From Orbicella franksi (taxonomy: Eukaryota), in contig OZ116704.1 of NCBI GenBank assembly GCA_964199315.1, positions 30,504,001 to 30,568,000 on the forward strand: a DNA stretch of 64,000 nucleotides, written 5' to 3'. Shown piece by piece: positions 9,802-10,740 of this stretch. Under the pieces are notes generated by a model. That model worked only from the letters and a program-made list of their open reading frames with translations, had not been told where the DNA came from and made no database searches. Position numbers and translations under genes: made by a program. The stretch's first letter is position 1. The number at the start of each line of letters is the position of its first letter.

Positions 9802-10740
9802 ATGGCCGCCGTGCTTTTCAAGTACACCTTCGCTAAGGCAAAATCTTCAAGCAAGGATCATAGCTCTAATTACCAGAGGAGATCAGTCGAAGCATTTTTG
9901 ACAGGTAATGGCTGGCATTCCGCTGGGAATCAAGTGTTTCATTCTGACCCCTCGTTTGGCACTGCTAAAGAACAGGTGCTTTCTCAAGCTAAAGCACTCC
10001 AAGACATCGAAGAACTGATAAAGTGGAAACCATCGCTAAAGGAAAGTTTTAAGGACACCCTGATAATGGTCGGCCAGGTTTACGATATCGACTCCTTGTT
10101 GAACACGCCCGAGGTTGTCAATGACAAGAAACGCGCAGCAAAAAGTCAGAATGGCAAGAAATCACTGCTGCTCGATTTGAAATCCCCTCGAGAATACTCG
10201 GCCACAAAGAAGCCCGTTTCTCCACACTGTTGTAAGCGCGAGTTCGATAGCACTAACATAACGGCAAAACCCACAAAACTCGGTCAGTCAAGCGTCGCTC
10301 CAGAAAGCCCGAAGCTCAAGGTGTCCCGTCCCGCGAGTACTCGCCCGATGGGTTCAGCGTCGAAAGTGTCAAGTCGGCCAATTGTAAACTACCCCAAAGC
10401 ACCTGTCAAAACCGCAAAGAACACCACGGCCACAGGTATGTTGATCTCCGGTCGCTGCTCAAGCGATATCAACTCCAATCTGTTATCCGCACTAGCACAC
10501 CGGGCCGACACGGCGTGCGACGAGGACGATATGACACCGCTCTATCTCCCTTGCCTGGAAGAGGAAGACGAAGGGGAAGCTGAAGACAAGCTGGGCGTAA
10601 ACAGACGCCAGGGACAGGCGTACGGATGTCGCAGGTACGGCAGCTATCACGTAGAGACATTCGTCAAGATGGACAACTGCGCCAGGAAACTCTGCTGCAC
10701 GAATATCAACGTGGATCCGTCGGAACGTGTCTTGGTCTAA
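9802..10740 (+). CDS. Intronless 312-aa protein of unknown function
   Basis: 939-bp ATG..TAA ORF with a purine at -3 and G at +4. It is visibly more GC-rich than its AT-rich flanks. No family is recognised with certainty. Confidence 0.8.
   Translation: MAAVLFKYTFAKAKSSSKDHSSNYQRRSVEAFLTGNGWHSAGNQVFHSDPSFGTAKEQVLSQAKALQDIEELIKWKPSLKESFKDTLIMVGQVYDIDSLLNTPEVVNDKKRAAKSQNGKKSLLLDLKSPREYSATKKPVSPHCCKREFDSTNITAKPTKLGQSSVAPESPKLKVSRPASTRPMGSASKVSSRPIVNYPKAPVKTAKNTTATGMLISGRCSSDINSNLLSALAHRADTACDEDDMTPLYLPCLEEEDEGEAEDKLGVNRRQGQAYGCRRYGSYHVETFVKMDNCARKLCCTNINVDPSERVLV

What the first reader, a model, noticed from the sequence alone, without database searches (positions are those of the whole stretch)
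9802..10110. Intronless animal orphan gene with a VapD/Cas2-like N-terminal domain
Seen: the first ~100 aa read MAAVLFK...RRSVEAFLTGNGWHSAGNQVF...QVLSQAKALQDIEE...LKESFKD...QVYDIDSLL. Known: bacterial VapD (Cas2-like ferredoxin-fold RNase; the toxin of VapXD systems) follows the pattern M-Y-A-x-x-F-D...L-x-x-x-G-F-x-x-x-Q-G-S-V-Y...Q-V...L-x-x-I-E-W-F-K-K-S-V-R-D...D-F-T-E-I-V (recalled from memory). The order, spacing and hydrophobic pattern match by eye, but the catalytic Asp after the first strand is replaced by Lys. The gene has no introns and is more GC-rich than its flanks, in a neighbourhood where every other host gene is intron-rich. Inference: a horizontally acquired or deeply diverged Cas2/VapD-fold protein, possibly catalytically dead and RNA-binding, fused to a disordered basic region.
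Basis: partly seen in the sequence, partly recalled or inferred. Interest (0 to 1): 0.78.

Follow-up and report, generated by a model that had tools for sequence, protein, structure and literature searches.

The report
Coral gene with VapD-like fold
A real, expressed, intron-free gene found only in stony corals and close kin encodes a protein whose first 100 residues are predicted to fold like the bacterial toxin VapD (a Cas2 relative) but lack its catalytic residues, which would be the first animal member of this prokaryotic fold if confirmed.

Summary
Window 9802-10740 (+) is a 312-aa single-exon ORF. It is single-copy in a 497-Mb coral genome and is carried on an unspliced polyA transcript. 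It is conserved in robust and complex stony corals, kept in microsynteny, and under strong purifying selection (N-domain dN/dS 0.07-0.11).

Sequence evidence is weak. HMMER finds nothing. hhalign against a VapD profile gives P about 0.01 (probability 4%), while the VapD-Cas2 control gives P 2e-7. The catalytic Asp and Ser are absent (position 7 K/T/N/E, position 44 Q/E/T/R). The structural Phe6 and Phe46 are kept.

Best reading: an ancient, domesticated, catalytically dead VapD-type domain fused to a disordered tail with conserved short motifs. Homology and horizontal transfer remain inferred, and convergence is the main rival.

The parts
9556..10922 (+). Minimum extent of the unspliced mRNA (5'UTR at least 246 nt, CDS, 3'UTR at least 182 nt)
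   Evidence: PolyA RNA-seq contig X1 record 3: 1,367 nt, collinear, 1 mismatch, 0 gaps, depth 25 against 2-6 in the silent stretch 9052-9439. The region is held by 14 RNA runs from 7 studies.
9802..10740 (+). Single-exon CDS, 312 aa plus stop
   Evidence: ORF list. Single copy in the genome. 35 homologues. Overall dN/dS 0.16-0.27.
9802..10101 (+). N-terminal VapD/Cas2-like modified ferredoxin-fold domain (residues 1-100), without the catalytic Asp/Ser pair
   Evidence: AF2 domain model with pLDDT 85.3 and pTM 0.75. VapD/Cas2 come first in six fold searches. hhalign against VapD aligns 83 columns in register with P 0.0097. dN/dS is 0.07-0.11.
10102..10326 (+). Variable, Lys/Arg/Ser/Pro-rich disordered linker (residues 101-175)
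   Evidence: pLDDT 31-41. Poorly conserved in alignment A1. dN/dS 0.31-0.82.
10327..10575 (+). Disordered region with conserved short motifs (residues 176-258): a basic RPxRxRPMGSASKV...PVKT stretch, SDINSNLL, and an acidic (D/E)DDMTPLYLxxLEEED block
   Evidence: Invariant and near-invariant columns in A1. pLDDT below 50. dN/dS 0.13-0.20.
10576..10737 (+). Cys-rich C-terminal segment ending in an invariant-type ...N(V/I)DPSE(R/K)V(V/L)V tail (residues 259-312)
   Evidence: Conserved C276, C293, C299, Y282, V284, E285, T286, F287, N303 and P306 in A1. dN/dS 0.09-0.15. Not confidently folded by AF2. No family match.
9314..9801 (+). Conserved upstream non-coding sequence (putative promoter and 5'UTR)
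   Evidence: The blastn block 9314-10739 against L063 (76% identity) begins about 490 bp before the ATG, although dS between the two CDSs is about 0.9.

Best explanation
This is a genuine, expressed, single-exon, lineage-restricted coral gene. Residues 1-100 form a VapD-type modified ferredoxin domain. It most likely descends from a bacterial or mobile-element vapD/cas2-superfamily gene that entered the germ line of an ancestor of stony corals. It then lost the Asp/Ser nuclease site, as the bacterial dead paralogue VapW did, and was retained as a non-catalytic binding module.

That module sits ahead of a roughly 210-residue disordered tail. The tail carries conserved basic, acidic and Cys-rich short motifs and a C-terminal hydrophobic tail, which presumably recruit partners. 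The protein would therefore act as an adaptor or scaffold, possibly binding nucleic acid, rather than as an RNase.

Shown: the gene is real, constrained, expressed and syntenic; the predicted fold is nearest to VapD; the catalytic residues are absent. Inferred: common descent with VapD, horizontal origin, and the adaptor or binding function.
For: Real gene:
- 35 homologues including named Acropora, Stylophora, Oculina and Desmophyllum proteins.
- dN/dS is 0.07-0.11 in the domain.
- PolyA transcript contig without a gap.
- Single copy in the genome.
- The same intron-bearing neighbour gene lies beside the orthologues in four other genomes.

Fold:
- Foldseek PDB top hit is C. jejuni VapD, E 2.9e-3, probability 1.00, TM 0.60.
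- AFDB clusters are rich in VapD-named entries.
- 26 of the top 30 Swiss-Prot models are Cas2 or VapD.
- ESM Atlas 'VapD family' clusters at TM 0.62-0.66, rmsd 2.5-2.8 A.

Topology: it matches HP0315 element by element, including alpha2/alpha2' and alpha3 (against PMC3351183).

Sequence:
- The hhalign alignment spans the whole domain in register. Its score is reached by 2 of 200 column shuffles and 1 of 200 block shuffles, and none of those aligned 80 or more columns.
- The local Cas2 alignment uses the same register.
- Structural F6 and Y45 equivalents are kept while the catalytic D7 and S43 equivalents are not.

Precedent and distribution:
- VapW is a precedent for a dead VapD fold (PMC11980593).
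- The family has only 8 representative clusters among 1.84 billion proteins.
Against: - No HMMER-level similarity to VapD or Cas2.
- hhalign probability is only 4% (P 0.01). The accepted VapD-Cas2 link scores P 2e-7 with the same alignments, and coral against Cas2 gives P 0.24.
- Foldseek E-values are modest (about 1e-3 to 1e-2). The Z margin over generic ferredoxin-like domains is only 1-2 units, and that fold is common.
- The model is a prediction from a shallow alignment of 22 sequences.
- No bridging sequences were found.
- GC content does not mark the gene as foreign: the domain is 0.46 and the neighbour's exons are 0.41-0.49.
- Function is entirely inferred.
Confidence: 0.5

Rival explanations
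1. Convergence. This is a taxonomically restricted coral gene, either arisen de novo or diverged beyond recognition from an unknown animal ancestor. Its N-terminal domain independently adopts a small ferredoxin-like alpha/beta sandwich that happens to superpose best on VapD/Cas2. There is no bacterial ancestry.
Against: Six searches with three different engines and five libraries all rank VapD first and Cas2 second, ahead of hundreds of other ferredoxin-like families. The VapD-specific elaborations (alpha2/alpha2' break, C-terminal alpha3, strand positions within 1-2 residues through beta3) are reproduced. The whole-domain in-register profile alignment has an empirical P of about 0.005-0.01. 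The F6 and F46 equivalents of the VapD core residues are conserved.
Confidence: 0.38
2. The domain is still an active nuclease that uses different residues (for example the invariant S48, D68 and E70) in place of the canonical Asp7/Ser43 pair.
For: S48, D68 and E70 are invariant and Q58 and Q62 are nearly or fully invariant. The domain is the most constrained part of the protein.
Against: Both residues shown by mutagenesis to be needed in VapD (D7 and S43 in HP0315; D7N abolishes toxicity in other VapDs) are replaced by variable residues. D68 and E70 lie on helix alpha2 in the model, not in the beta1/beta2-beta3 cleft.
Confidence: 0.06
3. A decayed retrocopy or chimera of ordinary animal genes (proteasome alpha-5 for residues 33-95, RNA polymerase subunit Rpb10 for residues 244-290).
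For: phmmer against PDB sequences lists PSMA5 (E 0.3-0.8) and Rpb10 (E 0.3) as the only hits.
Against: The E-values are at chance level. The family profile does not recover them. The predicted fold is not the proteasome Ntn-hydrolase fold. The ORF is intact and under purifying selection in many species.
Confidence: 0.02
4. Not a host gene: bacterial contamination or a chance ORF.
For: Intronless, no annotation, no Pfam domain.
Against: Embedded in a 64-kb animal window and syntenic with a spliced neighbour in five genomes. Present on contigs from 278 kb up to 34 Mb in other corals. PolyA transcript present. dN/dS well below 1. Eukaryotic start context.
Confidence: 0.01

Closest known systems
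VapD endoribonuclease toxins (H. pylori HP0315, PDB 3ui3; H. influenzae VapD, 6zi0/6zn8; C. jejuni VapD, 9kan; Xylella VapD, 5dyr)
   Different: No significant sequence similarity. The catalytic Asp and Ser are absent. It is eukaryotic, monocistronic and polyadenylated. There is no antitoxin partner gene. It is fused to a roughly 210-residue disordered tail. Dimerisation is unverified (one search gave no answer).
Cas2 (CRISPR adaptation scaffold/nuclease, Pfam PF09827)
   Different: No PF09827 match in the protein or anywhere in the genome. hhalign P 0.24. No Cas1 or CRISPR context. The beta1 Asp is absent.
VapW (catalytically inactive VapD homologue acting as antitoxin; PMC11980593)
   Same: VapD fold with the catalytic Asp and/or Ser mutated. 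It shows that the fold can be kept for binding alone.
   Different: VapW is encoded next to an active vapD and works by binding it. The coral genome has no detectable VapD and the gene stands alone.

Membership tests
VapD | Modified ferredoxin-like fold beta1-(alpha1/alpha1')-beta2-beta3-(alpha2/alpha2')-beta4-alpha3 (PMC3351183) | tested here: met
   AF2 model: E2-10, H19-35, E39-41, E45-47, H55-75, H78-82, E83-92, H96-100. All VapD PDB entries take ranks 1-5. This is a prediction, not an experiment.
VapD | Statistically significant sequence or profile similarity to VapD proteins | tested here: not met
   HMMER profile against PDB gave no VapD. The VapD profile found nothing in the genome. 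hhalign score 19.2, P 0.0097, probability 4%, against 42.6 and P 2e-7 for the VapD-Cas2 control. The result is nominal only.
VapD | Catalytic Asp at the end of beta1 (D7 in HP0315 and H. influenzae; D11 in C. jejuni) | tested here: not met
   The aligned position 7 is K, T, N or E across the family.
VapD | Catalytic Ser in the beta2-beta3 loop (S43 or S46) | tested here: not met
   The aligned position 44 is Q, E, T or R.
VapD | Conserved core aromatics (F6, Y45) | tested here: met
   F6 is nearly invariant and F46 is nearly invariant, aligned to the VapD Tyr.
VapD | Homodimer through beta4/alpha3 forming the catalytic cleft | tested here: inconclusive
   Complex prediction with two copies scored 0.20, below the 0.32 mark, and the tool's verdict was 'no answer'.
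VapD | Purine-specific endoribonuclease activity or toxicity | not testable with these tools
   Needs a biochemical assay.
VapD | Prokaryotic or mobile-element context, often with a VapX/VapW/VapY antitoxin gene | tested here: not met
   Monocistronic polyadenylated animal gene. The neighbour is a spliced coiled-coil gene.
Cas2 | Match to Pfam PF09827 / Cas2 profile | tested here: not met
   None of 23 members match. No genome hit, although controls ring in 6 of 14. hhalign P 0.24.
Cas2 | Ferredoxin fold with Cas2-type arrangement | tested here: met
Cas2 | Association with cas1 and a CRISPR array | tested here: not met
   Eukaryotic locus, with no PF09827 elsewhere in the genome.
Ordinary animal family (proteasome alpha-5; Rpb10) | Significant sequence match and matching fold | tested here: not met
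   E 0.3-0.8 only. Not recovered by the family profile. The fold differs.

The most novel reading that the evidence does not exclude
Stony corals carry a horizontally acquired member of the prokaryotic VapD/Cas2 toxin/CRISPR-adaptation superfamily. It has been domesticated for hundreds of millions of years as a dead-nuclease module that still recognises nucleic acid or a nucleic-acid-handling partner, and it acts in host defence, symbiont control or RNA regulation. This would be the first animal co-option of this fold.
Probability: 0.15. Interest if true: 0.88.

Novelty: new variant of a known kind. Interest (0 to 1): 0.66.

Why it matters
The papers I found and read treat VapD and Cas2 as prokaryotic families (PMC11980593, PMC3351183, PMC5303251). 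My literature searches found no report of a eukaryotic member. The coral orthologues in public databases are labelled only 'uncharacterized' or 'hypothetical'.

If the fold and ancestry hold, this adds a toxin-antitoxin/CRISPR-superfamily domain to the short list of bacterial toxin folds domesticated by animals (background knowledge, for example tick Dae amidases). It would also show the same toxin-to-binder route that VapW took in bacteria. And it gives a strongly constrained, coral-specific protein a testable structural hypothesis in a group of high ecological importance.

If the resemblance is convergent, it remains a well-supported, conserved orphan gene with a folded domain and conserved linear motifs worth characterising.

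Tried and rejected
- **Family libraries.** Pfam and NCBIfam scans of the protein, its halves and all family members gave no relevant hit. Pfam also gives no hit for genuine Xylella VapD, so those negatives say little about VapD.
- **PSMA5 and Rpb10.** The phmmer hits are chance-level and were rejected.
- **Language-model search.** The Atlas gave no usable hit for the whole protein, residues 1-105 or residues 170-312.
- **Domain-only search for short standalone or bridging relatives.** It found only a truncated coral copy. The full-profile search of 1.84 billion representatives found 8 clusters, one of them a spurious ankyrin match on the TPLY motif.
- **Homodimer prediction.** 'No answer' (score 0.20 against a mark of 0.32). 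It is not evidence either way (searches failed because the machine was busy).
- **Nesting in a host-gene intron.** The idea was raised by an exon-like read pile at 8054-8147 with loose ends. The partner sequences are not in the window, so there is no support.
- **GC content as evidence of foreign origin.** Rejected. The domain is 0.46, within the neighbour-exon range of 0.41-0.49.
- **LxCxE (Rb-binding) reading of L249-E253.** The Cys is not conserved (G or A in several members, and the motif is absent in the most divergent ones). The invariant residues are T-P-L-Y-L-x-x-L, so I make no LxCxE claim.
- **Identity of the neighbour gene.** Only weak coiled-coil-type Pfam hits.
- **Species identity of the divergent members P0035, P0036 and P0039.** It could not be established. 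The tree only shows long branches.

Full report
**Observation**

The window carries an ATG-to-stop ORF at 9802-10740 on the + strand. An in-frame TGA lies two codons upstream, and the ATG has A at -3 and G at +4 (sequence). The ORF is 51.1% GC against 40.5% in both flanks.

**It is a real host gene**

- The search for homologous proteins returned 35 proteins of about 300 aa at 40-99% identity. They include annotated but uncharacterised proteins of Desmophyllum, Oculina and Stylophora and of Acropora. The gene therefore predates the split of robust and complex stony corals.
- It is single-copy in the 497-Mb genome.
- On large genomic contigs of four other species the CDS is again one uninterrupted frame.
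- The same downstream, minus-strand, intron-bearing gene (exons near 12262-12399, 12995-13141, 13356-13526 and 15165-15275) lies beside the orthologue in all four. In one of them it is on the other side and inverted. This excludes contamination and shows long residence at this locus.
- Pairwise dN/dS (NG86) by region:

| Region | dN/dS |
|---|---|
| Residues 1-100 (N-domain) | 0.07-0.11 |
| Variable linker (101-175) | 0.31-0.82 |
| Motif region (176-258) | 0.13-0.20 |
| C-terminus (259-312) | 0.09-0.15 |

- The stretch is held by 14 RNA-seq runs from 7 studies.
- One polyA RNA-seq contig of 1,367 nt lies collinear on 9556-10922 with one mismatch and no gap. Its depth is 25, against 2-6 in the adjacent silent stretch. 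The downstream neighbour shows a CT..AC splice joint.
- Two deep raw-read polyA runs, each about 12% sampled, had no reads on the gene. Expression is therefore low or condition-specific.

**Sequence-level searches are negative**

- Pfam and NCBIfam give nothing for the protein, its parts or any family member.
- The only PDB sequence hits are chance-level, PSMA5 and Rpb10 at E 0.3. They vanish with the family profile.
- A profile of the whole family against 1.84 billion representative proteins finds only 8 clusters. Seven are family members or fragments, and one is a spurious ankyrin hit at E 8e-4.
- A domain-only search finds just one truncated coral copy.
- Pfam PF09827 and a genuine VapD profile find nothing in the coral genome.
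- Pfam also fails on authentic Xylella VapD (PDB 5dyr). Pfam negatives therefore do not test VapD membership.

**Structure**

AlphaFold2 on the full family alignment folds only about residues 1-90. It predicts the rest as disordered, with pLDDT below 50. The domain alone (22 sequences) gives mean pLDDT 85.3 and pTM 0.75. Its elements are E2-10, H19-35, E39-41/45-47, H55-75, H78-82, E83-92 and H96-100. Six searches agree on its nearest neighbours:

| Search | Result |
|---|---|
| Foldseek against PDB | C. jejuni VapD first (E 2.9e-3, probability 1.00, TM 0.60), then Cas2 and H. influenzae VapD |
| AFDB clusters | Many entries named VapD or Cas2 |
| Swiss-Prot models | 26 of the top 30 are Cas2 or VapD |
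| ESM Atlas | 'VapD family protein' clusters at TM 0.62-0.66, rmsd 2.5-2.8 A over 83-87 residues |

**Element-by-element comparison**

HP0315 is described as beta1(1-8)-(alpha1, alpha1' 21-35)-beta2(38-41)-beta3(44-47)-(alpha2 53-66, alpha2' 68-73)-beta4(75-87)-alpha3(88-93). The coral model has the same order and the same elaborations, namely a broken second helix and a terminal short helix. Strand positions are within one or two residues through beta3.

**Profile-profile test with calibration**

I collected authentic, diverse VapD cores from bacterial genomes and Cas2 proteins.

- hhalign of the coral domain against VapD gives one whole-domain, in-register alignment: 83 columns, score 19.2, P 0.0097, probability 4%.
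- That score is reached by 2 of 200 column shuffles and 1 of 200 block shuffles. No shuffle aligned 80 or more columns.
- With the same alignments, VapD against Cas2 scores 42.6 (P 2e-7). Coral against Cas2 scores 11.5 (P 0.24), though in the same register.

The sequence signal is therefore nominal, and far weaker than the accepted VapD-Cas2 relationship.

**Active site**

VapD needs a beta1 Asp and a beta2-beta3-loop Ser, and F6 and Y45 are structural. In the coral family the aligned positions are K/T/N/E at position 7 and Q/E/T/R at position 44. F6 and F46 are nearly invariant. This is the pattern of a fold kept without catalysis, as in bacterial VapW (PMC11980593).

The family's own invariant residues are W38, S48 and P50-G53 in the hairpin region, and Q58, Q62, A65, D68 and E70 along alpha2. 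They suggest a conserved binding surface. That is inference.

**The rest of the protein**

After a fast-evolving Lys/Arg/Ser/Pro-rich linker come three conserved features:
- a basic motif, RPxRxRPMGSASKV...PVKT;
- SDINSNLL;
- an acidic block, (D/E)DDMTPLYLxxLEEED.

The protein ends with a Cys-rich segment and a ...DPSE(R/K)V(V/L)V tail. None of these matches a known family. The LxCxE-like string is not conserved at its Cys, so I make no Rb-binding claim.

**Origin**

If the domain is homologous to VapD/Cas2, a prokaryotic or mobile-element source is the simplest origin. Three points favour that:
- the superfamily is otherwise described only from prokaryotes in what I found and read;
- the coral family is narrowly distributed;
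- the gene is intronless.

GC content does not help, because the domain at 46% falls in the range of the neighbour's exons. The acquisition would be old, since the gene is present and syntenic in robust and complex corals and in very divergent unnamed members. Convergence onto a common small fold cannot be excluded, and it is my main rival at about 0.38.

**Mechanism (committed, low confidence)**

I read this as a non-catalytic VapD-fold binding module, for protein or nucleic acid, at the N-terminus. It anchors a disordered, motif-rich tail that recruits partners. The protein would be an adaptor or scaffold rather than an RNase. The homodimer prediction gave no answer.

**Limits**

- The fold is predicted from a shallow alignment.
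- Structural E-values and Z margins are moderate.
- Homology, horizontal transfer and function are all inferred.
- The species behind the most divergent members are unknown.
- The scan's earlier notes hold only this same stretch.

Noticed in passing
window 10959-11095: A 137-bp MITE-like element lies just beyond the mapped 3' end of the transcript (about 37 nt past 10922). It has 35-nt terminal inverted repeats that are 91% complementary. RNA-contig depth jumps to over 3,000 here, so it is a high-copy repeat. A genomic A-run (10933-10948) just before it may cause internal oligo-dT priming, so the true polyA site is uncertain.
   Followed up: partly
window 8470-9051: Another high-copy repeat upstream of the gene, with RNA-contig depth up to about 1,800 and many loose ends.
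   Followed up: no
window about 11100-15275, minus strand: The downstream neighbour is a spliced gene (intron 12394-12997, CT..AC). It is expressed in the raw-read runs. Its exons are 66-84% identical at protein level across all compared genomes, with only weak coiled-coil-type Pfam hits.
   Followed up: partly
window 8054-8147: An exon-like pile of RNA reads with loose ends on both sides. The continuing sequences are not found anywhere in the 64-kb window, so it is probably a transcript from a paralogous or repeated locus.
   Followed up: partly
window 9314-9801: About 490 bp of non-coding sequence upstream of the ATG stays alignable (76% block) with a species whose synonymous divergence is about 0.9. 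This suggests a conserved promoter or 5'UTR.
   Followed up: no
L003:41319-41771 (Xylella pXF51): Authentic VapD (identical to PDB 5dyr) is annotated only as 'virulence factor' and gets no Pfam-A hit at E 0.01 or better. Pfam PF09827 catches only some VapDs, and only at the N-terminus. This is a coverage gap that can hide VapD-like proteins.
   Followed up: yes
L062:216-4484: A 1,422-aa uninterrupted ORF lies about 5.5 kb upstream of the orthologue in one related coral contig. It has no recorded Pfam hit and is possibly a transposon ORF.
   Followed up: no
window 56471-63863: Earlier first-stage notes on this window describe a multi-exon receptor tyrosine kinase with a duplicated dead Ig exon. 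I did not examine it.
   Followed up: no
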